From the NCBI GenBank assembly GCA_002269645.1, contig NIVC01000859.1, positions 363,561-427,560 on the forward strand: a stretch of DNA of 64,000 bases, given 5' to 3'. The notes under the pieces were generated by a model that made no database searches, had not been told where the DNA came from, and saw nothing but the letters and a program-made list of their open reading frames with translations. Source of the stretch: Macrostomum lignano. Lineage: Eukaryota. This document shows, piece after piece, positions 11,258 to 50,149 of the stretch (positions are counted from its first letter, which is position 1; every line of letters starts with the position of its first letter). The translations under genes were made by a program, and so were the position numbers.

Positions 11258-11284
11258 GGGACCGCCTGATTTGGAGCAAGGAGT

Positions 11285-28810: not shown

Positions 28811-29036
<226 letters not shown>

Positions 29037-29124
29037 ACACTATGACAGACAGTTGACCAAAAGCTATCAGCTATCAGCTAATCGCGTCAACTCACTTCCA
29101 GAACGTCAGCCGTGTATTTTGAGC

Positions 29125-29527
29125 ATGTCGAGTTCGTGTCTTCCCGAACCACCGAGTGACTGCGATAACAACACGGGTGGCGGCGACGACTTCAATGCAG
29201 CAGCTTCGAGAGGTTCACCCGTGACAGGCCTGTCCGTGCTCAACAGTCAGGACTCAGAGATGCAGATGCAGCTTGCCAGGCTATCCCGTCTGATGGCTCC
29301 AGCCGGTGGAAGCTCCACTGCGCTGCCACTAGAGTGCGACGCTGGATTCGAGAGCTCTTCTCTCTGCGGCAATTTCAACAATGTCGACCCGGAGTCCGAT
29401 GATCGACCGACAGCCAAACAGAAGCGAGTAGCTCGCGTGGTGATGGCTGTCGCCTTCATTCTGCTGTCAATGTGCTTCGTGCTGATTGTTGTCACGCTGT
29501 CAATGTCTGATCACATTGACAGAATGG
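29125..29527 (+). CDS. Exon of a small single-pass membrane protein of unknown family
   Basis: GC-rich codons; MSSSCLPEPP...KQKRVARVVMAVAFILLSMCFVLIVVTLSMSDHIDRM, then G|GTGAGT donor. The rest of ORF 29053-29868 is intron and a 21-bp repeat. Downstream exon not established. Confidence 0.7.
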
Positions 29528-29611
29528 GTGAGTTTCCGGGAAGTGTGTTGAAATTAAAAAAGCGCATCTTTTTCTTCTGTCTACAGCATTGGAAAACGAC
29601 TATTAGCACAC

Positions 29612-29860
29612 TTCTCTCTTTACTCACCGTACTCTACTCTCTACTCACTGTACTCTACTCTCTAATCACTGTACTCTACTCTCTAATCACTGTACTCTAC
29701 TCTCTAATCACTGTACTCTACTCTCTACTCATTGTACTCTACTCTCTAATCAATGTACTCTACTCTCTAATCACTGTACTCTACTCTCTAATCACTGTAC
29801 TCTACTCTCTAATCACTGTACTCTACTCTCTACTCATTGTACTCTATTTTATACTCACTA
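29612..29860. repeat. 21-bp minisatellite (TCTCTAATCACTGTACTCTAC), about 11 copies
   Basis: Read directly; gives the false TVLYSLI tail. Confidence 0.92.
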
Positions 29861-31036
29861 AACTCTAATCTCTGCTTTCGATCCAAAGATGAGACGGGAT
29901 TGAAGGGTTGAGGTCTCTCTGCCCTAGACGCTTACGGAAAGGTTATTAATAGGCTTTTAGGCCATGCATTGGTTTCCATGCCTTGTTTCTATTCTACTCG
30001 TAGAGCATTGTTATAATTGTTATAATGACCAAGGAAGAAGCATTGCCAAAGAATGTTATTTCTTCGGTGAAAAGTACCAACTAACAGAATGCAAATCGGA
30101 ATGAAGGCTAAATGCTGATTACCTTATCAACTGAAGACTTATAAACGTAGACTTCTGGAAGACTCGACACTGAAGCTTAGGAATATTGGCTATAATGCTT
30201 TTAAAATCTTGAAAAAAATACTCTGGTATATTTAGCTTCTCAATCTTCTTACTAAGAAGTAGCAAGAAAAGAATATAGTTTTTCTCCTTTAGTTTCCTCA
30301 AGAAACTATTCAATCTGCATTTTATCTCTTTACTATAATTAGAGATAAATTACAAGCATTGATTGTTCATTTCAGTTCGAAAAGCTCTAATGCACAGTCT
30401 GAGCAAGGCCAGGTCGCAGTCAAGCTCAAAGTTGTCATCGGAGTTTCGACAGACTTGGAATTTGGCTACCACTGCAGCATCAGCAACCGATAACTGATTG
30501 ATGCAATGCAGATTCGTTTTAGTATATTTAAGAATACCGAAACCAAAAAACGCTGTGGGCTGCAAATGACAACATTGCTTGTTTATTTGTATCTGTGTAA
30601 CGTACATGTACTGCTCGATTTAAACTAAATTAAGTGATTCCTGTTTTGCGGTTCATGGCTTAAAAATCATTATGAAGGTAAATAAAAAAGCTAAAGGTAA
30701 TATTACTCGTAGATCGCGGCTCATTTCCCACGGTGAACTAGTAAAAGTAGGTTAAGTGTAGGCAGAAGTGTAGCTTCTGGTGTCAAGTGGTTAAAATGAA
30801 TAAAAAGGTTTCTTGAGAGGCGTCTGAAGAGTAGTCTAAGTGCCACGCATTAAAGGAAAAGTAAAACTCAATTAAACGGATACTATACTCGTATGGAATC
30901 AGCTTTGAATTTTGTTAACAAACGTAATTATTGGTTAGAGGTTACGTTTATAATTATAGAAAACGCCTGCTAGAAAAAGAACACAGCAAATTCTATAGAG
31001 TCTTGTAAGAAAGTAAACTCTGCAAAACCACAGGAG

Positions 31037-32155
31037 CTACTGACGCTGCACCATGCACGCCTCCAGCCAGTCGTCGCGCACCCTCGCTTCGTTCACTTGG
31101 CTAATACCATTGCGCAACTCGATAAGATCTACGTCATCCGGCAGTTGGCCAAGTATGAAGATGCAAATTCGAGCAAGAGGCCGGTAGATAATTCCATAGT
31201 TGTCCTGCTGAAGGAATTCTTGCTGATTAAAGTCGATCCTGGCCACCTTTTGGGGAGATTCGTCCAGCCGCTGCCAGCCCGGGTTGTCATCCCAGTGCGG
31301 GAAGGTGACAAAAAACCAAAACTTGCCTGGCTCCGCATCTTCCAGAGTTTCTAAGACTCTCTCGGCAGTGGCGTTCAGCACAGGCTCCACAAAGGGCGGG
31401 CCGAGACTCCAGCCGCCCGGATATCCGGACAGGTCGAGGCGGAAGAAGTTTCCCAGACTGCCAAACGCGGCGTCAGTGTCATTGAACAGGCTGCAGAACT
31501 TGACGCCATCTCGTCCCAGAAGGCGGCAGTTCAGAGGCGACGAGAAGCCCTCATAGGTGACGTGGCCAACGTCGTACAGAGCGTCGAGTCCCGACACGCA
31601 CATGCCAGACTCACCGCCGTAGAACTTGCACAGATGAGCGTAGCGGAGGCACATCAGCGCAGTCGCGTCAGTTCCGTATGTTTGCGCCAGGTAGCGAATT
31701 CGAAGACAATTCCGGGTTTGGAAATCACCCACGAATAATTTTCCACTGGTTCCGCTCTCGGTGTATCGAACAGCAACATCAGGCAGTGGTTCATCCTCGA
31801 GATCAGTGCCCAGAAATTCTTCGATACTGTCGAACACCTGGTTGGATATTCTCTTTGCCGTATCTTCATTCGCGCGTAAATTCTGTTGCAGCATCCTCTC
31901 CAGTTCCGTCCTGAGGTTTTCATTAAACGGTTGCTGTGGCAACAACGGATAGGCAGCTTCTTGATCCGCTGTGTTGAAGAGTTGCACGATTTGCAGAAAC
32001 CTACCAAACACGTTTAATGCGGCATTCTTGTGCTTATTCTCGGGACCCCATTTAGGAAGGGCTGTTCGAAAGTCTTGAAAAAGTGTTTCGATAAAATTGT
32101 ATTGTCGCATCTCTTTGGCGATTTTTTCCGGTTCTATTCCAGCGAATTCGGCCAT
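31037..32155 (-). CDS. Stand-alone PCIF1/CAPAM-type adenine-N6 methyltransferase-fold protein, copy 1 (372 aa, intronless)
   Basis: EGFSSPLN...FCSLFNDTDAAFGSLG...SLGPPFVEPVL...FFVTFPHW aligns with PCIF1 ECFASPLN...YCSAFPDTDGYFGSRG...EANPPFCEELM...FIVFIPEW (recalled). No WW domain. Start taken at MAEF (32155), giving the same length as copy 2. Confidence 0.85.
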   Translation of the reverse strand: MAEFAGIEPEKIAKEMRQYNFIETLFQDFRTALPKWGPENKHKNAALNVFGRFLQIVQLFNTADQEAAYPLLPQQPFNENLRTELERMLQQNLRANEDTAKRISNQVFDSIEEFLGTDLEDEPLPDVAVRYTESGTSGKLFVGDFQTRNCLRIRYLAQTYGTDATALMCLRYAHLCKFYGGESGMCVSGLDALYDVGHVTYEGFSSPLNCRLLGRDGVKFCSLFNDTDAAFGSLGNFFRLDLSGYPGGWSLGPPFVEPVLNATAERVLETLEDAEPGKFWFFVTFPHWDDNPGWQRLDESPQKVARIDFNQQEFLQQDNYGIIYRPLARICIFILGQLPDDVDLIELRNGISQVNEARVRDDWLEACMVQRQ

Positions 32156-33899
32156 TATTTTCACACGGCTTGATTGTCTCAGTAATCGTTAGGGTAGTTT
32201 AGAGTGCAGATATTTGCAGCTCGGTGTTTTTTCAATGGCCTGTATTTATGTCGTTGCTCTCCAGCCGGTAGAGATTTTCATCGTTTATATTTCCAAGAAA
32301 TGAAACAAAATCTACGACAATAAAAATTCTCGCTGACGCGAGCGAGGGCAGGGAAATGTACAGTTTTGCAACTGAGGCAAAATTCCAGGAAATGGCTACT
32401 GTACATAACTCAGATCCAAATAACTGGATGTATAGTCTCTTCGGCCCTGAAAATTGTTTTTTTTAACTAGAAACAATAGCCCAAGTGGCGCGCGCCGCCA
32501 CTCGCTCATTGTAGGCAGCGCTAGAGCAGCTTATGTCCAGACAAAAAGTGCGCACAGTTATGTTCTTACCCCAAAAAGTCTGACCCCCGGCCTCAGTTCG
32601 TCTTTATGCAAAAGAGAGAGGCATACGAAGCTGCCGTGAAATGCGCAAGTACCTGCCGCAAAGTTTTGCTAGATTAATTTTCAAAATATATGATGAGACC
32701 ATCTTCAATTCGAGCACAAGAACGACGACTTAACTGGACAAGCTTTTTATCTTCGAGTACTATTAGTAGCATTTAAAGCTCGACACTTCGAATGATGGAA
32801 ACTTAAAGCTTAATCAAAGTGGTATTTTCTGGAATTTTGCAGATACAAGCATCTGATAACTGGTCATTTCGGACATTGATTTTAAACTAGGATGACTGTA
32901 GGAAATTATTTTGAAGACAATTTCACTTCTAGGATTATAAACTCAAAGCTGAAGTTTCTAATCGGTGTCATATCTTAACTGCAACAGGTACAAACAAGAT
33001 TAATAATTATATTTGCAGGAGGGTTGTGGGCACCCTTGCATAGCATCTTCCCTGAAATAGCTCTACAAACAGCACTGAGACAATTCTGCCTCAGTCTTTT
33101 TGTCTTTTTGTTTTCAGTCTTTTCTGTCTCACTCCGGAGCACATTAGCACGCTTCAAACAAAAGTGTACATCGTCTCTGACTTTCAAATCGTCAGGAATG
33201 TAACACTATGTGCTTTGGAGGTTGGCATACATGTTTGTAAATCGCATCGGCCAATTTTCGTTTACAAGCCCTAGATGAATCAAACCAGAGGTTACGCTCG
33301 TAGTGGTGCGAGAGTCAAATTCGTTTACTACTGGCTTACCATCTGGAGACAATGGCGCAACATTTATGAGTGCGACTTAATGACTTGCTGTAGGTTTAGT
33401 TTTTTATCGGAGTCCAGATTTCAGGGTGACAGATCAGGACGTGCTCAACTTAATTCAATCAAAATCAATTGATGAAATCTATGGCATCGTCTTCGCCATC
33501 CCAGTATGATCAGCAGCATCTCGAACGGAGATAGATTAGAGACTAAGACGATGAAAAGATGCAACAGATTACCATGTCTCTTTCTACTTTAAAAAAGGTC
33601 TTTACGCTCAAACCAAGCCACTGGTAACTTTTGAGCATTCTACTTTTGCCAAACAACTTTCCAAACATGATATTTAATAGCAATTAGTTGCAAAACCTCC
33701 AAAGCACAGTTATAGACTTTTTATGCGTAAAATAGTTGCTGAGGATCTCACGAAATATAGAGGGTATTCAGAGAAATTCAGTACATCAGAGAAATTGTCC
33801 TTGGCTATCTGGTGCCACATGTTGAAGGCCAAGACACTCTGCTTGGGCCAAGACACTCTGCTTGGGCCGAGACACTCTGCTTGCTCCCGATGAGGCATC

Positions 33900-35050
33900 T
33901 GCGGTGTCAGCATGGGAAGCGCAATCTGCTAATTTCAACATTTCTACGGTGCCAAAAACACCACTCCAAGACCTAGAAAAAAAGTCCAGGTGACAACTTT
34001 CGAAGCGATAGACTCGTGGGAAGAGTATATCCGCTTCATTGAAAACCCCGAGGTCTTGCACGAGAATTTGGTGAGTGTATAATACGCTTTTTGTAAAAAG
34101 TGTTTGTTTTGTAAAAAGATGTAAAAAGATTTACATCTTTTGAGATTGAGGCTGAGCGAATTGATGTATTAACTACTGTGTATATATACATAAAATACAA
34201 AAACTGAAGTAAAGTTTAAATATCCCAGCTAATTAAAAATCGCTTTAAACTCTTCCCTTTGACAGAGAAATCATTTGCGACTCTTCGCGCGTGCCAAGTG
34301 GGAAGATTCGGTACGCGACATGCTCGACTTCGCCCCAAGTCTGAAGATGCAGGCCGTGGTCAACTACAAGGGAGTCGACATACAGCAGCGAGCCACACAG
34401 GCTGGTGTACCTACCCATTTAAGTGACGATGATCTTGGACTTAAAAAAGTATTTTTGCCATTTGTTCAAGGTTAGTGCTATTTTTCAGTATAACATTTAT
34501 GAGCAGATATTTAGCTCCTATGATTCAATACAAGTTAGACCGCATGCACTGCTTAAAAAGATTTCAAGAATAAGCCAAATTATATTATCTCCAATCTACT
34601 ACTGCCCAACCATGAGTAGCAATGCAAAAATGTTTTTTCCAAGAAATTTTAATTCAGATCTAATTGTTGCTGCTCATTTCTTCAACAGAAGCGGCCGCGA
34701 AGATCTTCGGCAAAATCGGAGATGACAAAAGGCCTCCGATCGGAGCGGTCGCAAACGCTTGCGATCGTTTCAGACAGCGAATTCATCGCAAGGCCAGTGA
34801 AAAACCTCGGTCTACTAATAAACCTCAGCGGCTGGTTTGCAAGTATCGACCTCAGCAACCCCAGGAGCTTTCAAAGACTGCAGCCGCTTCTGGAGCAGCT
34901 TGTGCCGTGCAGCAAAGACAGACCCAGAAGAAAGCTGCCGCCTCTTCAAAGGCGGCTTCACGCAAGCGCCGAAGATCTAGCGACTCTGATTCCTCTGATG
35001 CTAGTTCTATCGTGGACGTGTACTCGAATTCTAGCGATTTTGAAATCTAG
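33900..35050 (+). CDS. Three-exon gene, tentatively DUF4806/BEN-like; exons about 33900-34070, 34266-34470, 34689-35050
   Basis: Phases fit: TTG|GTGAGT (0), gacag|AGA AAT CAT; CAA G|GTTAGT (1), caacag|AA GCG. Joined peptide ...WEEYIRFIENPEVLHENL-RNHLRLFARAKWEDSVRDMLDF...VNYKGVD...PFVQ-EAAAKIFGK...AVANACDRFRQR, with a basic/Ser tail. 5' end unclear (possible missing A in the A7 run at 33977-33983). Family call is tentative. Confidence 0.65.
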
Positions 35051-36539
35051 TAAAGTATGAACACTTGACGTCATCTCATTGTAGTTAACAATTATTTTTG
35101 TGTAATTTTATCGAGCTAAATTAGCTAAACAGTGAGTTTAATGTATGATTATGAGTGCATGCAAATTTGAAGGATCTCGTAAACCAGTGCTAACGGATAC
35201 GATTATCAATAGTCGCTGAACTCAGAATTGTCTATTCAGCTTGAGTGCTCACATTATGTATTTTCTATTTTTTCTAAACTTCATTAGTTACTGGTAGTTA
35301 GAAACAAAATTATTTTGTTTAATTTCTTGCTAATGCAAATTTTCCTTACGCTTATGTTAGTTTTTTTTCAGAAATTCAATGATTAATTACTAGCATATTT
35401 TAAACATAAAGTTTTTTTATAAATATTAATAAGCCTTTCGTACTATGAAAAGTGTTTGTCTGCTCATGTACTCGCTCATGGGCTAAGCTCATGTACTCGT
35501 AGTTACTAAAGAAGTCAGCTGATGCAGACACATGTCGTCGACGTGCTGATGGCTTGGCAAGGCGCATAGAGGCTTATTAAATATTCTAGCGCTCATGAAA
35601 AAAATCCGACCTTCTGGCAGAATCGTTGAATATATCGACGATCCTGAGGGCTGCTGACTTGATTCTTGCTTGAGATGGTGCGCAAAAAAATCATCTCGGT
35701 TTCTTGAACTTCTTGTTTCTGCGTTGCTCCAGTAACGACGCAGCGAAAACGCGTTCACATAAAAACATTTAATTTTTAGCTCAACTCGAGATCATAGCAC
35801 TATATTCAGCTTTCAGCATCTTTCTCTTTGCTTTTATTTGATAATCGAGCCAACCGGTGCTGGAAAATTAAATCAGTTTGAGGAGGACGAGAGGTGAGCG
35901 GGTGGGGTTGCGCTGAGCTTGCACAGCAAAATGCCTACTGAGCACTAGAGCTTAACCCAGCCCAAATGAACAAGCTCTAGGCCAGTGTGGTTGACACTCG
36001 AACAACCCCGGAATCTGGAGTGAGCTTCCACAGCCAGCCTCTCCAAGTTCTCCAAGATTTGCTCTCGCGATTTGTATTTCCCCATGACTTTATTAAAGCA
36101 TCAGCGGATACCAACGTCACACGCAAAGAGAAGCGAGTCGCTATCAAGGAGGTGTCTGAAGCTTGAAGCGGTTCCATTCATTTTCCCAAATGCTCCCATC
36201 TACTTATGATCTCACAAGAAGGCACAGCGAGCAACCTCAGTGACCTCAGGAGAAAGAGCTGGAATTGGAGTCTTTCTGGAAGCCGACTTCAATGCTGAGA
36301 CGAACCTTCAGGAGATTTAGCTGCAAGCTGGAGCAGGAAGCAGCCAAGCCAGCTGGATTCCAGACGGCTACCCAAGGCAAGCTCTGCATCTATATGCTAC
36401 AGACAGCTTCTGAATTCGTAACCTTGTTTTTTCTTGCGCTTAATGTGTTACAGAGGCATTGCCATAGAATGCTATTTTCGGGTGAAAAGTGCTAATGAAC
36501 AGGAGGAAAACCGACATTCATACGAGCGTATTGGCTGAA

Positions 36540-39500
36540 GGCTGATTCTCTTATCAACTGGACTTATAAACGGAGGGCTTCTGGAAGACGTGACATTGAA
36601 GCTTAAGAATGTTGACTTTCATACTTTGAAAATCTTGAAAAAAAACTCTATCTGAGCGTGTGAATCAGTAAAAAATGACACTTGTATGGGGAATTGTCGT
36701 GCGGAATTGTCTACTAAGAAGTAGCAAGAACAGAATATAAACTTCTTTTTCTGTATATTTTTCAATAAAATTTGAAGTCTGCATTCTTCAAACGTATGCA
36801 AGAACTCAGAAATAGATGCTGGGATTTCTTGGTCTTGAATCTCTTTACTTGAATTGAAAATAAATCGCCAACACTGACCGGTCATTTCAGTTCGACAAGC
36901 TCTTATGCGCATCATGAGCAAGGCAAGGTCGCAGTCAAACTCGAAGTTGTCGTTGGAGTTTCGGCAGACTTTTAATTTTGCTACCTCAACAATTCGGCAA
37001 CTGATAACTGATTGATGCAATGCAGATTGGCTTAATATATCTATATTTAAAAACACCGAGTAACCCTTTGGGCTTTAAATTAAAATATTTTTTGTTAATT
37101 TGCACTTGTGTAACATACTGCTCGATTTAAACTGAACTGAGTGAAAAAATTACTATGAAAGTAAATAAACAAAGCTTATTACGTAATATAGATCGCGCCT
37201 CATTACATACGGTAAACTAGAAAGTGTAAGCTAAAGTGAACGCATGCCCGAATTTTAAAGAAAAAGTTGTTTTATTCAACAGGTTTTTAAGCTACGCTCA
37301 TAGCTTCCGGTATTACATGTGAGAGGTTAAACTGAATAAAAAATTATTTCTGTGGTGTCTGAAGATTTTTCAAATGGCTGCTGTTAGCTAGTTGTCAGAG
37401 GTTTTTAACTATAGGAAACTCCTGGTAGAAATATATTATATAACACAGAAAATTATATAGAGTAGAGTCTTTTAAGAAGTTAACTCTGCCAAACCACAGG
37501 AACTACTGAGGCTGCACCCTGCACGCCTCCAGCCAGTCGTCGTGCACCTTCGCTTCGTCCAATTGGCTAATACGATTGCGCAACTCGATTAAATCTACGT
37601 CGTCAGGCAGTTGGCCGAGTATGAAGATGCAAATTCGAGCAAGAGGCCGGTAGATAATTCCATAGTTGTCCTGCTGAAGGAATTCTTGCTGATCAAAGTC
37701 GATCCTGGCCACCTTTTGGGTAGATTCATCCAGCCTCTGCCAGCCGGTGTTGTCATCCCAGTGCGGGAAGGTGACAAAAAACCAAAACTTGCCCGGCTCC
37801 GCATCGTCCAGAGTTTCTAAGACTCTCTCGGCAGTGGCGTTTAGAACGGGCTCCACAAAGGGCGGGCCGAGACTCCAGCCACCCGGATATCCGGACAGGT
37901 CGAGGCGGAAGAAGTTTCCCAGACTGCCAAACGCGGCGTCAGTGTCCTTGAACAGGCTGCAGAACTTGACGCCATCTCGTCCCAGAAGGCGGCAGTTCAG
38001 AGGCGACGAGAAGCCCTCATAGGTGACGTGGCCAACGTCGTACAGAGCGTCGAGTCCCGACACGCACATGCCAGACTCACCGCCGTAGAACTTGCACAGA
38101 TGAGCGTAGCGGAGGCACATCAGCGCAGTCGCGTCAGTTCCGTATGTTTGCGCCAGGTAGCGAATTCGAATACAGTTCCGGGTTTGGAAATCACCCACGA
38201 GTATATTTCCACTGGTTCCGCTCTCGGTGTATCGAACAGCAACATCAGGCAGCGGTTCACCCTCGAGATCAATGCCTAGAAATTCTTCGATACTGTCGAA
38301 CACCTGGTTGGATATTCTCTCTGCCGTATCTGCATTCGCGCGTAAATTCTGTTGAAGCATCCTCTCCAGTTCCGTCCTGACGTTTTCATCCAATGGTTGC
38401 TGTGGCAACAACTGATAGGCAGCTTCTTGATCCGCTGTGTTGAAGAATTGCACGATTTGCAGAAACCTGCCAAACACAGCAAAAGTCGCATCCCTGTGCC
38501 TTTCCTCGGGACCCCATTGAGGAAGAGCGGTTCGATAGTCTTGAAAAAGCCTTTCGATAAAATTGTATTGTCGCATCTCCCTGGTGAGTTGGTCCGGTTC
38601 TATTCCAGCGAATTCGGCCATTACTAACAGAAGGCTTGATTATCTTAGTAATTGTGAGAATAGATGTTGAATGTTGAGGTTTTCAGCCCAGGATTTTTTC
38701 ATAACCTGCATTTATATCGTTGCTTCCCAGCCCATAGAGATGTCATTGTTTAAATTTCCAAGAAATAAAAAAATCCACGAAGTACGAGGGCAGGGAACTG
38801 TACGGTTTTACAGATAGAGCGAAGGTCTCCAGGAAATGTCTACCGTACATAACTCAGGTTCAGGAGCGTAGAGTAGGGTTGGAGCGCCTGGGGGGAGCTC
38901 AGTGCTGCGTTTGTTTCCTGTCCTCCTGTGCGGGCCGGCCCACGCATCCACCCCTCCGTTGCCATGTCAGGTCGGGGTTGGGCGTCGGTCCCGGGCCTGC
39001 CCGCGGCTCCTCCCCAGGAGCGGCCTCCGCGCCGGGCTCATTTAGAGTTCTCCGGCCGGCCGTCCCGGCCTGTCAACCGTCCAGGTCAAATTGCTGTCTC
39101 GCCTTTGATGTCTGCCTGAAATCGATGGAAGCTGCTGTAGCTTTGCTATGCGCTGCATGTACTATTTGAAGGCTGAGCCTATTTGCCCATTTCTATTATT
39201 CTAGCTTAATTTCTAAGACATATTTACATTTTAACCGCAGCAAAGTTCTGACCACCAACTATTTATAAGCAAGAGAGAGAGGCCTACGGAGCTATCGTGA
39301 AATGCATAAGCACTTGCTGCAAAGTTTTCCTCGACTACTTTTTAAAAGATGAGACCAACTTCAATTCCAGTATCAGATTTCTATTTTCTGCATCTATGTT
39401 CTGCAGTCTACTTTTAGTAGCATCGACACTTAAAGTGATAACCACAAACATCTTGATCGAAGTCGTATTTTAGGCAAAAAGTATCGGTTTTTTATTGGCA

Positions 39501-40810
39501 TTACATTAATTTTAAACTAAGAGAAAATAAAAAGCTAAGAATCAACATTAGTAAAAGAGTATATCAGTATTAGTATTAGTATATTAGTATATTTCAATTA
39601 CTACGTGTTTCGCACGCCAAGGTGCATCTTCAGGTTTTTTGGTAGCAAAAGAAACGAACGATGTTTTGATATTAAAAAAATGAATTCAATGAGGGTATGA
39701 AAATCAATAGCATTTGTTAAGATGGCCAGGTTTAGGCGGGTTAAGACGGTTCTTGAATTAATTCAAACAAAACTAATAAAATCTATGGCATCATCATCGC
39801 CATCCCAGCATGATTAGTACCGTCTTGAACAGAGATAGATTAGAGACAAAGACGCGATGAGAAGATGGAACAGATGACCAGTCTCTTCCTACGTCCGAAA
39901 AAAGCCCTTACGCTCAAACCAAGCCACTGACAATTTTTTTGCAGCGCCGGACGGAGCAACGCAGACACAAGAAGTTCAAGAACGCGAGCTAACTTTTTGT
40001 TGTTGCACTCCTTCTCAAACAAGAATCAAGTTGCCAGCTCTCCGGACCGTCGAGATATTCAACAATTCTGCCATTTTCCATAAGCGCCAGTCAGGGCCAT
40101 AACTGCCCCTCAGTGCCGTCTTACCAAGCTAACAAAGTTCATCAGCACTTCGATGACATGTGTCTGCATCAGCTCTGACTCTGTTGGTCACTACATGGGC
40201 TGAACCCAGACCGAGTTTCTGGGCTTTCTAGGAAACTATTTCAAATTTCCCTGATGTCGCTGACCAAGATTCAATAATGGACAAAGTTAAACTGCTGGAC
40301 ATCCTCAGCTATATATAGCCTTTCAAGCATTCTATCATCACCCCGAGACCGTCGCCAACTTCAGTGTCCCCCGAACGTGATTTTTCATCACAACCTTTAC
40401 ATTTCTTAAGGTCTTAAAAAACTCTTTTACTCATAAAGAAGGCTACAAGTATGCTTTTAAAAGTAATTGCTACCTATTTCTATTAATAAAATTAGTGGAA
40501 AGTTGTTTTCATAGGGAGAATCTTCAAATCTTCAAACGCGTTCACTTACAAAGATTTAATTTTTAGCTCAACACGAGCTCATAGCACTTTTTCGGCTTTC
40601 AGCATTTTTCTCTTTGTTTTACTTTGATAATTGAGCCAGCCGGCGCTGGACAAACAAAACAGTTTGAGAAGGACGATCGAGAGAGGTGAGCGAGTTGGGG
40701 TGAAGCGTTTTAAATGAGCCGACTGACTCAGCATGCACAGCAAAATTCCCAGTGAGCACTAGAGCTCGACCCAGTCCGACCGAGCTATCCATAGGCCAGT
40801 GTAGTTGACC
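36540..40810. repeat. Segmental duplication unit 2
   Basis: See unit 1; carries an internal inversion and lacks the 3-exon gene. Confidence 0.85.
37503..38621 (-). CDS. Stand-alone PCIF1/CAPAM-type methyltransferase-fold protein, copy 2 (372 aa, intronless)
   Basis: Colinear with copy 1 without indels; same EGFSSPLN, DTDAAFGSLG and GPPF motifs. Confidence 0.85.
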   Translation of the reverse strand: MAEFAGIEPDQLTREMRQYNFIERLFQDYRTALPQWGPEERHRDATFAVFGRFLQIVQFFNTADQEAAYQLLPQQPLDENVRTELERMLQQNLRANADTAERISNQVFDSIEEFLGIDLEGEPLPDVAVRYTESGTSGNILVGDFQTRNCIRIRYLAQTYGTDATALMCLRYAHLCKFYGGESGMCVSGLDALYDVGHVTYEGFSSPLNCRLLGRDGVKFCSLFKDTDAAFGSLGNFFRLDLSGYPGGWSLGPPFVEPVLNATAERVLETLDDAEPGKFWFFVTFPHWDDNTGWQRLDESTQKVARIDFDQQEFLQQDNYGIIYRPLARICIFILGQLPDDVDLIELRNRISQLDEAKVHDDWLEACRVQPQ

Positions 40811-42382: not shown

Positions 42383-43404
42383 CAGGGGCGTCGCCATGGA
42401 TTTTATGGTGGGGGACAAAACCAACAACTCTACATGTACATGTACATAATTTTCAGAATCCGTGTTGTCAGCGCTCAATTGACGCCATAGGCACTCATTT
42501 TAGCGCCGCAGGCACTCATTTAAGCGCTGCAGGCACTCATTTTAGCGCCGCAGGCACTCATTTTAGCGCTGCAGGCACTCATTTTAGCGCCGCAGGCACT
42601 CATTTTAGCGCAGCAGGCACTCATTTAAGCGCCGCAGGCACTCATTTTAGCGCCGCAGGCACTCATTTTAGCGCCGCAGGCACTCATTTTAGCGCCGCAG
42701 GCACTCATTTAAGCGCCGCAGGCACTCATTTTAGCGCCGCAGGCACTCATTTTAGCGCCGCAGGCACTCATTTTAGCGCCGCAGGCACTCATTTTAGCGC
42801 CGCAGGCACTCATTTAAGCGCCGCAGGCACTCATTTTAGCGCCGCAGGCACTCATTTTAGCGCCGCAGGCACTCATTTTAGCGCCGCAGGCACTCATTTA
42901 AGCGCCGCAGGCACTCATTTTAGCGCCGCAGGCACTCATTTTAGCGCCGCAGGCACTCATTTTAGCGCCGCAGGCACTCATTTTAGCGCCGCAGGCACTC
43001 ATTTTAGCGCCGCAGGCACTCATTTTAGCGCCGCAGGCACTCATTTTAGCGCCGCAGGCACTCATTTTAGCGCCGCAGGCACTCATTTTAGCGCCGCAGG
43101 CACTCATTTTAGCGCCGCAGGCACTCATTTTAGCGCCGCAGGCACTCATTTTAGCGCCGCAGGCACTCATTTTAGCGCCGCAGGCACTCATTTAAGCGCC
43201 GCAGGCACTCATTTAAGCGCCACAGGCACTCATCTAAGCGCCGCAGGCACTATTTTCTGTCACCCTGAAACAAAATTATTGATTTTCAAAACGGGTGATG
43301 AGGTTGGGTGGGGGAGGGGGACAAAGCATTGGCATGTCCCCAGCTTTTACTAGGGGGGGGGGAGGACATGTCTCCCCTGTCCCCTCCCGGTGGCGACGCC
43401 CCTG
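42383..43404. mobile_element. Non-autonomous hAT element with 14-bp perfect TIRs and internal 21-bp minisatellite
   Basis: CAGGGGCGTCGCCA (42383-42396) and TGGCGACGCCCCTG (43391-43404); 8-bp flanks gtgctatg / atgctatg (7 of 8). Confidence 0.88.
42490..43250. repeat. 21-bp minisatellite (GCGCCGCAGGCACTCATTTTA), about 36 copies
   Basis: Read directly; source of the (MSACGAK)n ORF. Confidence 0.95.
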
Positions 43405-44562: not shown

Positions 44563-47500
44563 TTAGGATTTCAATTTTACGCCGGAACCGGAAGCTTCTA
44601 AGCGCTGCAGGATTGCAAGCATCTCCTGAGTCTGAATCTCCAGAGCTTCAAAGCGCTGTTCGGTTTGCCTGGCGAAATCATCCTGACTCTTAGATAACAG
44701 ACGAGGTCGTAACTCGCGAAATTGTTCGGCTTGAAACTTTAGAAACGCCATGTAGTCTTCTGGGTACTTCTTCTGGTCATTCCACCAGAGTTGATTCTGA
44801 GAATTGTAGTAGGCAATAGTGGATATTTAAGTCGGTTTATGCTGCAAACGCATTTGCTAAGATTTAGCGTTATAATTTTATACTTACTGTGTCATCTGGT
44901 CCAGGCGCAACCGAGTTATGGCAACAATTGCAAAAATTTCTTATAAAATTGTAGATATAGTAAATGAAGGAGAACGGAGGCGGCACAGGACTAATGTTCT
45001 CGTACTCCCGCACTAGATAATAGTATTCCTTGCGCCAAATACCAACTGCTTCATTGGCCATTCGGTTGACTCGAAGGCTAAACAATGCAATCAGCAGGTT
45101 CAGCATCACGATGTTCACCAGCCCCATGAATATAAATAGCATAAGATTCTCAAAAAATCCAAGACCTTCAGAATGGGCCTGCTTTCCAATGGTAACGTTC
45201 TGGTTTGTGATTTCAGATTTGAATTCCATTTTGTCGAAGTTAGTAAACAAAATATTGAAAGGCAGAGTAATTCCTTGTACAAATGTGTGCCAACGATACC
45301 ATGTGCTGTTGCGGTAAACTGGATCGGCACCTGTTACTGTAAACAGTAGGTTGAAGAAAAATACTCCAAAAGCAGCAATAATGACGCCGACAATGGCTAG
45401 AAACGGTATCAGATCGTTAAAAATAAGCTTCCAGAGCATTGTGGCCACAGGTCCAATGAGGTCCGACAAAATGAGAAAGCGCATCGACCGAATGATCAGC
45501 AGACCGGTTGCGCAGCTGAAAACCATTTGGCATGCGTAGATTTCGTGTTGAAGCCGAAAGTCAGATAGAAGAATCCACTTAAAAACAAGACCGATAAACA
45601 GTAATAAAAGTGAAACTAAGTCGAGGTAATTTAGTGCTTCCTGGAAGTATAGAACTATACGGCAAAAGCAACCACAAGCGAGGACTCTGCGTCGCTTTTT
45701 GAGTCTGCAGAGGTCAGTAACTTCTTGAAGCACAAGTGACAAAAGGTAACAAACCAAAGGAATGTCGGGCCAGGCACCGTAAGAAAAAGAGTAATCAAAC
45801 TCGATTGTAAACCATATTAAGTAGACAATCTGCGCTACGAATGATACAAAGTGAATCCAGAATTTGGTCCTTGGTGCGTAGGCGCACTCACAACAGCAAT
45901 CTTTTTTACATTGTGTGTGATTTCCGACAAAATTGCCTGCTTCAGCGCTTTCCTGGGTGATTTCGGACGGATTGCTATGATTTTGTTCGTTGGTTTTTGG
46001 CTGAAGACTTGAATCGCTGTAATCAGCAGTGGAACCGCATTTGCAAGGCCGTCGTCCCGTCTTCCAATCCTTTTGTGTCAGGCTGTAGATGCAGTCAGTT
46101 GCAAAGAGCTCATTGCAGTCAGCCTCTTCGATCATTTCCAGTATAGTGTACCAATCTATTTGAGAATTTTCGTTTTCGTTTCGGCAAGGAAACTTTGGGC
46201 CCGTTTGTTTCTCGTCGTCTCTAAATTTTCCTCGCACGTAGTTGAAAAGCAACTCCTGCGTCTGAGGCGTCTCTTCTCTGTCTCCGTCCTCCTGTTGATT
46301 CTTGAACTTTGTGCTTGCAAACAGTCCATCCAATGCATTGACAGAAATTTCAACTACTTTACACTGAAGCTTCAATAGTTTTTCATGCTTTCCGGAAGCT
46401 TCAGAACGCAGTTCAGCAATTTTCAGGCGCAGTCGGCTAAGAATTCCTATGCTGGCGGGAATCAATTCGAACTGTCGAGTGAGAATCAAGTCAGGCAGAA
46501 GTTCGATGTTGTTGTAATAATCCGATATGTCAATCACGGACAGTTCAGATGGAGGCTCAATAAAAGTCTCGCTTTTTTCTGTGATGACATTAAAAACATT
46601 GAAGACATTTCGTTTTGGCTTCTGAGGACGATTTTTTTCTAGAACTATTTGTACATGCATGTCTAGAAGTCTACTCTCCGTCATCAAGTTAGCAAAGTTT
46701 AATTGCAAGGCGCTTCGATATAATGTTGTTGAGTTCCCTTGTGCACTTACTGCTTCATACAATATGTATGCGCTTCTTTCTCTTCGTGAAATAGTCTCAG
46801 CTGCTTTTTTAGAATCAAAGAAAGATTGTAAAGCTGGTATGAGGTTCTTCTGAGCTGTCACCTGATCGGGCAGCTGAAGTGCTCTGCTCGGTGGGTCAAT
46901 CAGGCGAAAAATTGACAAGCGAACTTCGTTTCTTATAAACTGATTCTGTAAGTTCTGTTGAAATTTTTCGTAAGCATTACTAACTTTAGATACGTATAGC
47001 GAACCTCTTTTGAAAGCAAAGTCAATGCATGACTCTCCGGATTCTGTGCGCTTTTTAAGCCTCTGATTCTTGTTCAACAAATACAGAATGTTTTCTTCGT
47101 GGCCTCCCTCGCAGGCAAAGTGCAGGCAGGTAGCTTCCTTATACACACCTTTGGAAACAGTCAATTTTAGCAGTTCATCTTCCTCCATACCGGAAAGCTT
47201 TGACAGCGGAGCGATTAGTTTTTCCAACTCAAAATGTCTAGAGAAGGAATGTATCAAGTGAAGTCCATCCGTACCAAACTCAACTTGCTTATATAGGTCC
47301 TTGAAGTCAATATCTTTTTCCTCATGAGTGTAGAATTCAGTGAGAAGAAGTCTGAGTAATTCAGGCTCTAGCTGAGCATGGTGCAGAAAATTTTGCCCTG
47401 CTTGATTATCCCTTTTCAGATCTATGCCGTGTTTGAAAAGAACCTTGATCTTGGCTAGAATTTCTTTCGCAAGAGTAGTTAAGTCTTCTTCAGAAGCAGG

Positions 47501-49192
47501 CAACCTCATGTCCTGGAGCAGATAGTGCAGTAGAGTGTTTCCGAATACGTCGGGAGAACTATTAATTTCTACTGTATCTTCCAGCTCTTTTAATGTCACA
47601 GATCCTATTGCATAGGACAAAACAGATTGTTGTCTGTTGTTTTTCCAGTTAAGAAATTCAGTTGAACCGTACTTTTCCCGGGCCGCTTTTAATACCCCTT
47701 GTCTATTCCTACTGGCCGCTATATGAAGACAGGTATTTCCGTAAATATCCTTCTTTTCCAAGGCTTGCTTATCGGCGTCACGAACTAAATTGGCTAGAAC
47801 TGCCTCTGCCTCGTCGGATCTATCATCCCAATATTCAAAGGCGATATGCAGAACCGAGTAGCCTGAACCATTTTTCCAATTATTATTTTTCTCGCGATCC
47901 AATGCTGTCGCTAGTAGCGTCTCCATGTCTTTTTCAGTACTGTTGTTAGAGTTCTGAAGAGCAACTTGCAAAACCGTTTCTTTATGACGATTTGGCCATT
48001 GGAGACAATTCTCGGTCTTTTTAAGTTCGTAAACACGCTTGTCAACAGCAATTAGAATTTTAGGATTCTCTGCCGCATAGTGAGCAAGTGTCTCTCCGGA
48101 ATTATCGAAACATTTTATCTGCTTAAGATTTACATATTTGCAGAGTTTTTCAACGGTACTACCAGAACTGCATTTCATTGCAATTTTCAGAGGCGTTTCG
48201 CCCCATTTGTTATATTCATGCAGGCATTCGCGTCCAGCAACTACTATTATGCGAAGAATTACTCCTTCGTTGTCCTCATTTTCCTCTGCTGCAATGTGAG
48301 CGCAAGTGTTTCCCTTTTTGTCTTTAATATTGACGTTTCTTTTGGTTAGGAAGGGTTTGATTCGATTGTCCCAGACGTCTATCGGCATGCACTTTGCCGC
48401 CAAGTGTAGCGGCGTCTGTCCTGTGTCATCTTTTACCTCCAGACAGTTTCTATCAAACTTAGCTAGCGCTTCGAGTAGCTCAGCTCCATCTTTGCTTGAT
48501 GCAGCATGATGAGCAGCCGTTTTACGCCGCTCATCCGAAATAAGAGCACAAGGCGTAGCGGGCAAGGCAGGCACAGTAGCTACTGCCTCTGAGAAATTTT
48601 CCGACTTTGCCAACTCAAGCAGTTTGCGCCTGTCACTAATTTTCCGACTCAACTGTGAATTGGGCGAAGCTGGCGATGGCGGCGGGATTGTACGAGGCGA
48701 CGGATTTGGAGGAGGCGTCGGATTTGCAAGAGGCGTCGGATTTGGAGGAGGCGTCGGATTTGCAAGAGGCGTCGGATTTGGAGGAGGCGTCGGATTTGGA
48801 GGAGGCGTCGGATTTGCAAGAGGCGTCGGATTTGGAGGAGGCGTCGGATTTGGAGGAGGCGTCGGATTTGCAAGAGGCGTCGGATTTGGAGGAGGCGTCG
48901 GATTTGGAGGAGGCGTCGGATTTGGAGGAGGCGTCGGATTTGCAGGAGGCGTCGGATTTGCAGGAGGCGTCGGATTTGCAGGAGGCGTCGGATTTGGAGG
49001 AGGTGTCGAAGTCTCAGGTTGAATTTCTTTGGACTGAACTTCGACTTCGCCTTCCGTCCTGGAGCCTTCCTCCATAGTGTGCTGTTCGCGGCCTAATTCT
49101 CTTTGCCGATCAACTATCTGCTTGTAGTTTGGCGGATCCTCTGAGTCTCCATCTGCACCCACTGCAGCACCGTGCACGTCATCGGCATCCAT
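44563..49192 (-). CDS. Ankyrin-repeat TRP cation channel, paralog 2, intact (about 1512 aa); exons 44888-49192 and 44563-44796
   Basis: 1440-codon ORF with a Pro-rich N-terminus, about 14 ankyrin repeats, S1-S6, LNLLIALFSLRV, GIWRKEYY...PVPPPF. 91-nt intron ACA|GTAAGT...tctcag|AAT joins the NQLWWNDQKKYPEDYMAFL coiled-coil exon, at the same position as in paralog 1. Acceptor tttctcacag lies 20 nt upstream of the ATG. Confidence 0.93.
48705..49005 (-). repeat. Coding 18-bp minisatellite encoding (PPPNPT/PPANPT/PLANPT), about 17 copies
   Basis: Read directly within the TRP paralog 2 ORF. Confidence 0.92.
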
Positions 49193-49499
49193 AAGCGATT
49201 ATGGATGTTCCTCTGTGAGAAAGAAACTGACAGAGACCGGCTGCGGGAATAAGCGACATTTTCAAGGGTTTAAGAGTTTTATATCCCGAAATAATTATGT
49301 TAAGACAATGGATATCCTAAGTCATTGGATTACAATATCAACAACCAAAAGTATCCGCCACTCGACTTATTTGCTGAATTGGATAAATGAGTAGCTAATT
49401 AGGTTTGATGTATAGTGATAATATGTCTTGATATGGGAGAGAGTCGGAGAGGGAAGATAGTAGAAGAGAGTAAGGAAGGGTGGAGGACAGAGTGGGGAA

Positions 49500-49950
49500 G
49501 AGTACGGGAGAGTAAGAGAGTGGGAGAGAGTGGGAGAGAGTGGGAGAGAGTCGGAGAGAGTGGGGGAGAGTGGGAGAGAGTAGGAGAGAGTGGGAGAGAG
49601 TAGGAGAGAGTGGGAGAGAGTAGGAGAGAGTAGGGAGAGAGTGGGAGAGAGTAGGAGAGAGTAGGGGAGAGTGGGAGAGAGTGGGAGAGAGTAGGAGAGA
49701 GTAGGGGAGAGTGGGAGAGAGTGGGAGAGAGTGGGGGAGAGTGGGGGAGAGTGGGGGAGAGTGGGAGAAAGTGGGGGAGAGTGGGGGAGAGTGGGGGAGA
49801 GTAGGGGAGAGTGGGGGAGAGTGGGGGAGAGTGGGGGAGAGTAGAGAGAAATAGGGAGAGTGGGGGAGAGTGGGGGAGAGTGGGGGAGAGTAGAGAGAAA
49901 TAGGGAGAGTGGGGGAGAGTGGGGGTGAGTGGGGAAGAGTGGGGAAGAAT
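49500..49950. repeat. Purine-rich 10-bp repeat (GTGGGAGAGA / GTGGGGGAGA)
   Basis: Read directly; about 300 nt upstream of the TRP paralog 2 ATG. Confidence 0.92.
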
Positions 49951-50149
49951 GGATCCGGATTTAAGAATGGGATAATGGAATTGATTTATTTGTGATCGCA
50001 AAAAATGATAAAACAGCATATCAAAGTATTGAAATGATTTTTTTTTAAAGTAGAAAAGAAAAATTGGCAGAAGATTATGTGACAAATGAAAAGTTGATCA
50101 CCTTAAAAACCATTGCTGTGCTAAGCGAGCCTCAATATATGTGTACAAC

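What the first reader, a model, noticed from the sequence alone, without database searches (positions are those of the whole stretch)
31037..38621. Tandem pair of intronless, WW-less PCIF1-like methyltransferases with catalytic NPPF changed to GPPF in both copies
Seen: two intact, equal-length 372-aa ORFs carrying the PCIF1 MTase motifs (EGFSSPLN, DTDAAFGSLG, xPPF, FxxW), with Gly at the catalytic Asn position in both, no WW domain and an unrelated N-terminal half. Established: PCIF1/CAPAM makes cap-adjacent m6Am using NPPF; Asn-to-Ala loss abolishes activity in the human enzyme; its WW domain docks on the Pol II CTD. Inference: these are not ordinary PCIF1 orthologs but either SAM/cap-binding pseudoenzymes or enzymes with altered chemistry or substrate. 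The compact intronless form resembles stand-alone PCIF1-like domains I recall from large DNA viruses and protists, so horizontal origin is possible. A link to spliced-leader caps is speculative.
Basis: partly seen in the sequence, partly recalled or inferred. Interest (0 to 1): 0.82.

Follow-up and report, generated by a model that had tools for sequence, protein, structure and literature searches.

The report
Dead-motif PCIF1-like gene pair in flatworm
Two neighbouring genes of the flatworm Macrostomum lignano encode compact, giant-virus-like relatives of the mRNA-cap methyltransferase PCIF1 that have lost the key catalytic asparagine yet still look selectively maintained, so they are probably non-catalytic cap/SAM-binding proteins rather than ordinary enzymes.

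Summary
Two intact 372-aa ORFs lie on the minus strand (31037-32155 and 37503-38621). They are 89% identical, match Pfam PF12237 (the PCIF1 methyltransferase domain, E~1e-25) and solved PCIF1 structures, and carry GPPF where PCIF1 has NPPF. No WW domain is present. The window is Macrostomum lignano.

New context:
- The genes belong to a flatworm-expanded family of compact, apparently intronless PCIF1-like genes. The other M. lignano paralogues keep NPPF.
- All seven copies of this gene on three contigs have GGC. One haplotype has three units, one of them a recombinant mosaic.
- N252G is the only radical, lineage-specific change among 32 strongly conserved columns.
- dN/dS is 0.48 overall and 0.29 in the core. 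The lineage has not evolved faster than its NPPF sister paralogue.
- Fold and HMM affinity are closer to giant-virus compact PCIF1-like proteins than to canonical cellular PCIF1.
- Relatives of this compact type are fused to RNA polymerase subunits, XRN, FtsJ and capping-enzyme domains.

Most likely these are transcribed, constrained, catalytically dead or crippled cap-adenosine methyltransferase paralogues that still bind SAM and capped RNA. Activity, binding partners and the direction of any gene transfer remain untested. I rate this a new variant of a known kind, of moderate interest.

The parts
31037..32155 (-). Copy 1 CDS (372 aa plus stop) of the compact PCIF1-like protein, GPPF variant. 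It differs by 1 aa from GenBank PAA51302.1, BOX15_Mlig015920g3.
37503..38621 (-). Copy 2 CDS (372 aa plus stop), 89% aa and 93.9% nt identical to copy 1.
31391..31402 (-). Motif IV of copy 1: GPPF (GGC CCG CCC TTT), residues 252-255, aligned to the catalytic NPPF of PCIF1.
37857..37868 (-). Motif IV of copy 2: GPPF, with the same codons as copy 1.
31223..31660 (-). PF12237 (PCIF1 methyltransferase domain) match of copy 1, residues 166-311.
37689..38126 (-). PF12237 match of copy 2, residues 166-311.
30106..33623 (.). Duplicated unit A of the tandem segmental duplication (period about 6.3-6.5 kb). The CDS plus about 160 bp 5' and about 40 bp 3' are 91.5% identical to unit B; the outer flanks are 77-83% identical, with indels.
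36533..39929 (.). Duplicated unit B of the tandem segmental duplication.
32156..32413 (-). Conserved 5' flank of copy 1 (putative 5'UTR/promoter), alignable with 38622-38857.
38622..38857 (-). Conserved 5' flank of copy 2.

Best explanation
Both genes are members of a Macrostomum lignano-expanded family of compact PCIF1/CAPAM-like N6-adenine methyltransferase-fold proteins. Each protein is about 370 aa, has no WW domain, appears intronless, and consists of a short helical N-domain followed by a Rossmann methyltransferase domain. The architecture and sequence profile are those found in giant viruses (NCLDV) and many protist or metagenomic sequences, not those of canonical cellular PCIF1.

In this one subfamily (Mlig015920) the catalytic Asn of motif IV became Gly. 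That takes two nucleotide changes, AAY to GGC. Every other family-invariant residue, including the SAM-pocket motifs E-G-F-x-S-P-L-N, D-T-D and F-G-S-x-G, was kept.

Shown here: homology, fold, the substitution in all copies, the tandem copy-number-variable array, and purifying selection.

Inferred: without the Asn side chain that positions and activates the adenine N6 amino group, the proteins cannot methylate, or do so only very poorly. They are probably retained because they still bind SAM/SAH and 5'-capped RNA. In that role they would act as non-catalytic regulators, either as partners of the NPPF paralogues encoded elsewhere in the genome or as competitors that shield the substrate from them. 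Precedents are METTL14 beside METTL3, and the catalytically dead Drosophila Pcif1.
For: Identity:
- PF12237 at E~1e-25 and PDB PCIF1 at E 7e-10 with GPPF aligned to NPPF.
- AF2 model with pLDDT 87 and pTM 0.87. The top Foldseek PDB hits are the six PCIF1 structures, E 1e-13 to 1e-10, and nothing else falls below 1e-3.

Subfamily:
- Full-length structural matches to NCLDV proteins of 315-390 aa, TM 0.52-0.69.
- The nearest non-flatworm homologue with a readable context (P0030) sits on a dense contig with Rpb5, RNase III, Skp1 and OTU genes.
- 40 IMG/VR giant-virus loci encode relatives.
- The giant-virus HMM beats the canonical HMM by 50-65 bits for the window proteins and for every clade member except the closest paralogue P0024, whose margin is about 29 bits.
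- The 9-residue SPLN-to-FCS spacing is shared with the compact group, against 4 residues in most canonical PCIF1.

Link to caps and transcription: compact-type domains are fused to Rpb1, Rpb2, XRN, FtsJ and capping-enzyme/MTase domains.

Family in the same genome: NPPF paralogues Mlig000263 (3 tandem units), Mlig030305 and A0A1I8HAP9. The window pair groups with Mlig030305 at bootstrap 88, and a clade of 10 sequences has bootstrap 91.

The substitution is real and specific:
- GGC is present in all 7 copies on 3 contigs. Relatives use AAY.
- 169 of 200 aligned domains have N.
- Among 32 columns conserved at >=75%, the window proteins differ at 5. Only N252G is both radical and absent from the sister paralogue.

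Constraint:
- dN/dS is 0.48 overall (p=0.005) and 0.29 in the core, residues 131-320 (p=0.011).
- The CDS is 94% identical between copies against 77-83% for the outer flanks.
- Tajima relative-rate tests show no acceleration relative to the NPPF sister (p 0.2-0.7).

Expression: the GenBank gene models of this assembly derive only from RNA-seq transcript assemblies (PMC5730564).

Loss of function is expected: human PCIF1 N553A is inactive (PMC9178792). Mutating the equivalent Asn inactivates METTL16, and mutating the first and last motif residues together abolishes METTL5 activity (PMC8287941).
Against: - No biochemical data exist; activity with Gly at this position has not been excluded.
- The two copies differ by only 68 nt, so dN/dS rests on few events. 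Gene conversion between copies is evident (mosaic copy, and a 223-nt identical central tract) and complicates the interpretation.
- ORF intactness alone is weak evidence: P of no stop by chance is about 0.06.
- Two copies on contig NIVC01002998.1 carry a +1 A in an A-run near codon 11. If this is real rather than a PacBio error, it disrupts the first 15 codons.
- No orthologue from another species was found, so long-term conservation of Gly cannot be shown.
- Cap binding, SAM binding and interaction with the NPPF paralogues are all inference.
- Expression is inferred from how the annotation was built, not from reads I examined.
Confidence: 0.55

Rival explanations
1. The proteins are still active methyltransferases. 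Gly at motif IV is tolerated or redirects chemistry, for example to a different acceptor atom, a different substrate such as TMG-capped spliced-leader RNA or DNA, or a different rate regime.
For: All SAM-pocket and fold-defining residues other than Asn are intact. Purifying selection is strongest on the methyltransferase core. Gly at the same position recurs independently and is conserved in a protist clade (GPPY in P0014, P0016, P0018, P0019) and in a virus-like protein (P0125, GPPF). In amino-methyltransferases the backbone carbonyl of the first Pro also contacts the target amino group (own knowledge, M.TaqI-type mechanism).
Against: Removal of the Asn/Asp side chain has inactivated PCIF1 (N553A) and METTL16, and a double change of the first and last motif residues abolishes METTL5 activity. 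No characterised N6-adenine methyltransferase with GPP[FY] is known to me. 85% of aligned homologous domains keep Asn.
Confidence: 0.2
2. These are young redundant duplicates of a dead gene on their way to becoming pseudogenes. The apparent constraint would be an artefact of recent duplication and gene conversion.
For: Divergence between copies is low (6% nt). There is clear conversion or unequal crossing-over. Two copies may carry a frameshift. ORF intactness is only marginally improbable under neutrality (P about 0.06). No orthologues were found in other species.
Against: dN/dS is significantly below 1 (p=0.005 overall, 0.011 in the core). Since splitting from the NPPF sister at 39% identity, the lineage accumulated no more unique changes than that sister and kept 27 of 32 highly conserved residues. 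The flanks diverged 3-4 times more than the CDS. The locus is in an RNA-seq-derived annotation.
Confidence: 0.17
3. The pair is part of a recently integrated giant-virus or mobile-element fragment and has no host function.
For: The genes have a viral-type architecture and profile affinity. The CDS is intronless in a genome averaging 4.9 introns per gene. The genes are tandemly amplified.
Against: The flanking genes are host-type ankyrin-repeat genes, and no viral hallmark or transposase ORFs were found nearby. The closest relatives are other M. lignano paralogues and eukaryote-like transcripts carrying a poly(A) signal. Identity to any viral sequence is only about 30-40%. GC content matches the surroundings.
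Confidence: 0.05
4. GGC is a sequencing or assembly error, and the true codon is AAC.
For: The assemblies are PacBio-based and contain homopolymer indels.
Against: This would need two substitutions, not an indel. GGC is seen identically in seven copies on three independently assembled contigs that differ elsewhere.
Confidence: 0.01

Closest known systems
Human/zebrafish PCIF1 (CAPAM), the cap-specific m6Am methyltransferase (PDB 6IRV-6IS0)
   Same: It has the same Pfam family (PF12237) and Rossmann methyltransferase fold, and is the top and only significant PDB structural match. The SAM-pocket motifs are conserved. A helical region precedes the methyltransferase domain.
   Different: The window proteins have no WW domain and no long linker, and at about 370 aa are much shorter than the 704 aa of human PCIF1 (length from own knowledge). 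The N-terminal 140 aa are not alignable by profile, and TM is only 0.51. There is a 5-residue insertion after SPLN. The catalytic Asn is replaced by Gly.
Compact PCIF1-like proteins of giant viruses (e.g. Cafeteria roenbergensis virus E3T4I2, Hokovirus A0A1V0SFI2, Tetraselmis virus 1 A0A2P0VNQ5, pithovirus-like, Bodo saltans virus, salmon gill poxvirus)
   Same: They are of similar size and show full-length structural alignment (TM up to 0.66-0.69). They share the 9-residue spacing, score higher by HMM, and have no WW domain.
   Different: The viral proteins mostly keep NPP[FY] and lie in viral genomes. The window genes lie between host ankyrin-repeat genes, have GPPF, and have ES in place of the QW motif. 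None of the viral proteins is functionally characterised as far as I could find.
M. lignano NPPF paralogues (Mlig030305/PAA48317.1; Mlig000263/PAA56815.1; A0A1I8HAP9)
   Same: They have the same compact architecture, including the N-terminal domain, an intronless CDS and tandem arrays, and form a well-supported common clade.
   Different: They retain the catalytic Asn, and identity to the window proteins is only 32-39%.
Drosophila Pcif1 (catalytically dead PCIF1 orthologue)
   Same: It is a precedent for a PCIF1-family protein kept without methyltransferase activity (PMC9916840).
   Different: The fly protein is a canonical WW-containing orthologue that still binds Ser5-phosphorylated Pol II CTD. 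The flatworm proteins lack the WW domain, so they cannot work that way.
METTL14 (non-catalytic partner of METTL3; motif EPPL, own knowledge)
   Same: It has a degenerate motif IV in an otherwise intact methyltransferase fold and coexists with an active paralogue. This is a possible functional analogy.
   Different: It belongs to a different methyltransferase family. No evidence of heterodimerisation was obtained here. The only hint is that some metagenomic proteins carry two PCIF1-like domains, one with N and one degenerate.

Membership tests
PCIF1/CAPAM methyltransferase family (Pfam PF12237) | Significant match to the PF12237 profile | tested here: met
   E 3e-25 and 1e-25, at 89-90 bits against a 31.1-bit cut-off.
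PCIF1/CAPAM methyltransferase family (Pfam PF12237) | Rossmann methyltransferase fold superposable on solved PCIF1 | tested here: met
   The AF2 model has pLDDT 87. Foldseek's top six hits are PCIF1 entries, E 9e-14 to 1e-10, TM 0.47-0.51.
PCIF1/CAPAM methyltransferase family (Pfam PF12237) | Catalytic NPPF motif (Asn essential) | tested here: not met
   GPPF is present in both window copies and in all seven copies on three contigs.
PCIF1/CAPAM methyltransferase family (Pfam PF12237) | Conserved SAM-pocket motifs (ExFxSPLN, DTD, FGSxG) | tested here: met
   All are invariant in the window proteins. Actual SAM binding was not tested.
PCIF1/CAPAM methyltransferase family (Pfam PF12237) | N-terminal WW domain binding Pol II Ser5P-CTD (canonical metazoan PCIF1) | tested here: not met
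   No WW hit appears at E<=1. The ORFs are closed just upstream of the ATG.
PCIF1/CAPAM methyltransferase family (Pfam PF12237) | PCIF1-specific helical domain forming the m7G pocket with the methyltransferase domain | tested here: inconclusive
   Residues 9-116 are predicted helical and the Foldseek alignment spans about 400 columns. However, profile-profile alignment covers only residues 144-349. The ERW...PLLP similarity of the N-terminus is not significant (E 0.04, probability 1.3%).
PCIF1/CAPAM methyltransferase family (Pfam PF12237) | m7G-cap-dependent N6-methylation of cap-adjacent Am | not testable with these tools
   This needs an in vitro assay or LC-MS.
Compact NCLDV-type PCIF1-like subfamily | Protein of about 315-415 aa with a short helical N-domain plus methyltransferase domain, and full-length structural similarity | tested here: met
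   TMq/TMt are 0.66/0.68 to CroV E3T4I2, 0.59/0.57 to Hokovirus and 0.58/0.66 to a pithovirus-like protein.
Compact NCLDV-type PCIF1-like subfamily | Higher profile score against giant-virus sequences than against canonical cellular PCIF1; 9-residue SPLN-to-FCS spacing | tested here: met
   The scores are 147 against 96 bits. The spacing is 9 residues in all M. lignano members.
Compact NCLDV-type PCIF1-like subfamily | QWG motif upstream of motif I | tested here: not met
   W183 is Ser and P186 is Cys in the window proteins. Both changes are shared with the NPPF sister P0024.
Compact NCLDV-type PCIF1-like subfamily | Monophyly with viral sequences in a supported phylogeny | tested here: inconclusive
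   The NJ bootstrap is 0 for all nodes deeper than the 10-member flatworm-like clade.
Pseudoenzyme (dead methyltransferase retained for a non-catalytic role) | Loss of an essential catalytic residue with the fold and cofactor pocket retained | tested here: met
   The essentiality of the Asn comes from PMC9178792 and PMC8287941.
Pseudoenzyme (dead methyltransferase retained for a non-catalytic role) | Purifying selection after the loss | tested here: met
   dN/dS is 0.48 (p 0.005) overall and 0.29 (p 0.011) in the core. There is no rate acceleration relative to the NPPF sister. This rests on few substitutions and a single species.
Pseudoenzyme (dead methyltransferase retained for a non-catalytic role) | Demonstrated absence of activity, and a defined non-catalytic function or partner | not testable with these tools
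   Active-motif paralogues do exist in the same genome. Any interaction with them is untested.

The most novel reading that the evidence does not exclude
An animal lineage (Macrostomum, perhaps flatworms more widely) acquired a giant-virus-type compact cap-adenosine methyltransferase and amplified it into several tandem arrays. One array then evolved into a dead-enzyme paralogue. That paralogue would work as a SAM-sensing cap 'reader', or as a METTL14-like obligate partner or antagonist of the active paralogues. This could add a lineage-specific layer of 5'-cap regulation in an organism where a large share of mRNAs are spliced-leader trans-spliced.
Probability: 0.15. Interest if true: 0.7.

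Novelty: new variant of a known kind. Interest (0 to 1): 0.45.

Why it matters
PCIF1/m6Am biology is known almost only from vertebrates. [quoted passage not shown] This locus shows that a genetically tractable flatworm, which supports transgenesis (PMC5730564) and RNAi (own knowledge), carries a whole family of WW-less, virus-like PCIF1 relatives, including a naturally 'catalytic-dead' branch that still looks constrained. This offers three things:
- a natural experiment separating catalytic from non-catalytic roles of the PCIF1 fold;
- a handle on the uncharacterised compact PCIF1-like proteins that are widespread in giant viruses, where they are even fused to RNA polymerase subunits, XRN and capping enzymes;
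- a candidate case of virus-animal gene exchange.

If the genes turn out to be drifting duplicates, the finding reduces to an ordinary lineage-specific expansion with one decaying branch.

Tried and rejected
- Profile-profile comparison of the N-terminal 148 residues with the helical domain of canonical PCIF1. Only the ERW...P-LP stretch aligned, and not significantly, so I do not claim homology of the N-domain to the PCIF1 helical domain.
- NJ phylogeny of 186 domains with 100 bootstraps. The shallow clades are well supported but every deep node has bootstrap 0, so neither the direction nor the fact of horizontal transfer can be concluded. No ML tree software was available.
- Word-indexed profile searches. 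They missed even the known M. lignano paralogues and returned no M. lignano canonical PCIF1. This is uninformative about whether a canonical WW-containing PCIF1 exists in this genome.
- Literature and supplement searches for Mlig015920/Mlig030305/Mlig000263, and for PCIF1 in flatworms or giant viruses. Nothing was found, so tissue- or stage-specific expression is unknown.
- Source organisms of the nearest non-M. lignano relatives (P0025, P0027, P0028) could not be identified. Their contigs look like eukaryotic transcripts.
- A 177-aa ORF repeated in each unit of the three-copy haplotype is represented in the window only by a deletion derivative. I rejected it as a second gene of the unit.
- An Rfam scan of the window found no RNA family.
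- Assembly error as the source of Gly was rejected: seven concordant copies, and two substitutions would be required.


Full report
**1. Observation**

The minus strand carries two intact ORFs, at 31037-32155 and 37503-38621. Each encodes 372 aa from its ATG. The proteins are 89% identical without gaps, and the CDS are 93.9% identical.

Both match Pfam PF12237 at E about 1e-25 over residues 166-311. Despite its name 'PCIF1_WW', this family is the PCIF1 methyltransferase domain. No WW domain is detected. phmmer against PDB sequences returns only human and zebrafish PCIF1/CAPAM (E 7e-10 and 2e-8). In those alignments the query's GPPF lies exactly on the enzymes' NPPF. The motif is encoded by GGC CCG CCC TTT at 31391-31402 and 37857-37868.

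**2. Source and locus structure**

The proteins belong to the cluster of GenBank PAA51302.1 / PAA53933.1 (BOX15_Mlig015920g3/g2) of Macrostomum lignano. The window is 98% identical to contig NIVC01003467.1.

The two genes are the core of a tandem segmental duplication, 30106-33623 against 36533-39929. The CDS, about 160 bp of 5' flank and about 40 bp of 3' flank are 91.5% identical. The outer flanks are 77-83% identical and full of indels.

A third contig, NIVC01002998.1, carries three units. Its middle copy is a type-1/type-2 mosaic, which shows unequal crossing-over or gene conversion. Two copies there have an extra A in an A-run near codon 11. This could be a PacBio homopolymer error or a real frameshift.

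All seven copies have GGC at the motif. Relatives use AAY, so two substitutions separate Asn from Gly. Several database gene models for this family are artefacts:
- P0183 splices unit 1 to unit 3.
- P0023 and P0029 are frameshifted.
- P0022 fuses three tandem genes.

The neighbouring genes are host-type ankyrin-repeat genes on both sides. No viral or transposon ORFs were seen.

**3.

An exhaustive HMMER search found 1,639 relatives at E<=1e-3. The best hits are other M. lignano proteins of the same compact design:
- Mlig030305 (361 aa);
- A0A1I8HAP9 (359 aa);
- Mlig000263, which is three tandem units of about 400 aa.

There are also three sequences of unknown origin from metagenomes, SRA assemblies or MetaClust. 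All of these keep NPPF. The N-terminal half of the window proteins aligns along its length with these sequences, so it is a conserved domain of the subfamily and not an unrelated addition.

In an NJ tree the window pair groups with Mlig030305 (bootstrap 88), and ten sequences form a clade (bootstrap 91). Deeper nodes are unresolved.

**4. Fold and subfamily**

An AlphaFold2 model built on this alignment is confident (pLDDT 87, pTM 0.87). It shows four long helices (residues 9-116), a beta-hairpin, and then an alpha/beta methyltransferase domain.

Against the PDB, the only significant Foldseek matches are the six PCIF1/CAPAM entries (E 9e-14 to 1e-10, TM about 0.5). Against predicted viral structures, the best matches are giant-virus proteins of similar size, aligned over the full length: CroV E3T4I2 (TM 0.66/0.68), Hokovirus, Tetraselmis virus 1, pithovirus-like viruses, Bodo saltans virus and salmon gill poxvirus.

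Other evidence points the same way:
- A close homologue, P0030, lies on a gene-dense contig with Rpb5, RNase III, Skp1 and OTU genes.
- 40 IMG/VR giant-virus loci encode relatives.
- An HMM built from those viral sequences scores the window proteins and most other members of the M. lignano clade 50-65 bits higher than an HMM built from 59 canonical cellular PCIF1 domains. For the closest paralogue, P0024, the margin is about 29 bits.
- The clade shares the 9-residue spacing between SPLN and FCS with the compact group, against 4 residues in most canonical PCIF1.
- Sequence-profile similarity to canonical PCIF1 covers only residues 144-349. Similarity of the N-domain to the PCIF1 helical domain is suggestive but not significant.

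The genes therefore belong to the compact, NCLDV-type branch of the PCIF1 superfamily. M. lignano genes average 4.9 introns (PMC5730564), so an intronless family of this type is compatible with horizontal or retro-origin. The direction of any transfer is not established.

**5. What the compact subfamily probably does**

Metagenomic members carry the domain fused to RNA polymerase Rpb1 or Rpb2, XRN 5'-3' exonuclease, an FtsJ-type methyltransferase, a capping-enzyme/MTase module, or a helicase. These fusions tie the subfamily to transcription and the mRNA 5' end. In effect they replace the WW-CTD tether of metazoan PCIF1. I infer that the NPPF members are cap-proximal adenosine N6-methyltransferases.

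**6. The Gly substitution**

Of 200 aligned domains, 169 have Asn at this position. Among 32 columns conserved at >=75%, the window proteins differ at five:
- W183S and P186C, both shared with the NPPF sister paralogue;
- A205S and S210C, both conservative;
- N252G, the only radical change and the only lineage-specific one.

Every SAM-pocket motif is intact. A single N553A change inactivates human PCIF1 (PMC9178792). Mutating the equivalent Asn inactivates METTL16, and a double change of the first and last motif residues abolishes METTL5 activity (PMC8287941).

Non-Asn variants recur elsewhere in the superfamily. There is a protist clade with GPPY (P0014/16/18/19) and a virus-like GPPF protein (P0125). 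Several two-domain proteins have one or both motifs degenerate, and in some (P0039, P0069, P0073) one domain keeps Asn while the other has lost it. Loss of the catalytic residue with retention of the fold is thus a repeated theme.

**7. Selection**

The Nei-Gojobori dN/dS between the copies is 0.48 (25 synonymous and 43 non-synonymous changes; one-sided p=0.005). It is 0.29 in the core, residues 131-320 (p=0.011). The CDS is much more similar between copies than the flanks are.

Tajima relative-rate tests with five outgroups show that the GPPF lineage has not evolved faster than its NPPF sister (p 0.2-0.7).

There are caveats. Few substitutions are involved. Gene conversion is evident. ORF intactness alone is weak evidence (P about 0.06). 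No orthologue from another species was available.

The GenBank annotation of this assembly consists solely of RNA-seq-derived transcripts, so the locus is transcribed. I did not examine reads myself.

**8. Conclusion**

The most likely reading (confidence about 0.55) is as follows. These are transcribed, selectively maintained, catalytically dead or crippled members of a flatworm-expanded, virus-type PCIF1-like family. They retain SAM and capped-RNA binding and act non-catalytically, perhaps with or against the NPPF paralogues.

The rivals are:
- an active enzyme with altered chemistry or substrate (0.2);
- drifting young duplicates (0.17);
- a passenger of an integrated viral or mobile element (0.05);
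- a sequencing artefact (0.01).

Compared with known systems:
- The fold and family are those of PCIF1, but the genes fail the defining NPPF and WW features.
- The architecture resembles the uncharacterised NCLDV compact proteins.
- In concept they resemble Drosophila's dead Pcif1 (PMC9916840) and METTL14.

I rate this a new variant of a known kind, with interest 0.45.

Noticed in passing
L043 (NIVC01002998.1) 7570-8688, 14372-15491, 21175-22294: A second haplotype or homeologue carries three tandem units instead of two. The middle copy is a recombinant, type-1 at the 5' end and type-2 at the 3' end. Copies 2 and 3 have a +1 A in an A-run (A7 against A6) near codon 11. The GenBank model PAA53933.1 evades this by 'splicing' unit 1 to unit 3.
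   Followed up: yes
L046 (NIVC01002568.1) 8001-14499: Paralogue Mlig000263 is annotated as one 1283-aa protein. It actually consists of three tandem NPPF units about 2.5 kb apart, each with its own ORF. Either the annotation fused them or the transcript is a read-through polycistronic precursor.
   Followed up: partly
proteins P0041, P0051, P0071, P0091, P0128, P0136 (metagenomic): Compact-type PCIF1-like domains occur fused to an FtsJ methyltransferase, RNA polymerase Rpb1 domain 5, XRN exonuclease, a helicase C-terminal domain, a capping-enzyme C-terminal domain plus a methyltransferase, and a complete Rpb2. GT8 glycosyltransferase fusions also occur (P0036).
   Followed up: partly
proteins P0039, P0050, P0069, P0073, P0101, P0124, P0152, P0161: These proteins carry two PCIF1-like domains in tandem. 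In several, one domain keeps NPP[FY] and the other has K, V, H, F, A or I at the Asn position. This is reminiscent of active/inactive methyltransferase pairs.
   Followed up: no
proteins P0014, P0016, P0018, P0019 (MMETSP/Logan) and P0125: Gly occurs independently at the catalytic position. GPPY is conserved across a protist clade of canonical-length PCIF1-like proteins, and GPPF occurs in an AT-rich virus-like 332-aa protein that also has FKSQG in place of FGSLG.
   Followed up: partly
window 13503-15234 and 28811-29039: There are very long (AGAC)n microsatellites, 433 and 57 copies. The first creates spurious ORFs of 500-644 aa on the minus strand (13413-15347) with no Pfam hit.
   Followed up: partly
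window 29053-29868 (+), repeat 29616-29873: This ORF's C-terminus is a 21-nt tandem repeat encoding (LYSLITV)n after a hydrophobic segment. Repeat number differs between contigs: 271 aa here against 341 aa in L043.
   Followed up: no
window 881-2370, 7539-8836, 9435-10202, 25264-25554, 42489-43256, 48694-49008, 49489-49952: There are numerous minisatellite arrays with periods of 28, 23, 29, 21, 18 and 10 nt. The 29-nt array at 25264-25554 is greatly expanded in NIVC01003467.1 (L001 15215-17290).
   Followed up: no
window 20272-24211 (+) and 44870-49192 (-): Large ankyrin-repeat ORFs flank the PCIF1-like array on both sides in opposite orientation. In L043 the corresponding genes continue into what looked by eye like an ion-channel (TRP-type) transmembrane region; no domain search was run on that part.
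   Followed up: partly
window 33862-34079 against L043 12134-12667 and 18937-19470: A 177-aa ORF present in each inter-gene spacer of the three-unit haplotype is reduced in the window to a deletion derivative that keeps only residues 1-41 and 144-177.
   Followed up: partly
protein P0265: A 658-aa PF12237 protein is annotated in Leishmania sp. This is a PCIF1-like gene in a kinetoplastid, whose mRNAs carry the hypermethylated cap-4 with m6,6Am (own knowledge).
   Followed up: no
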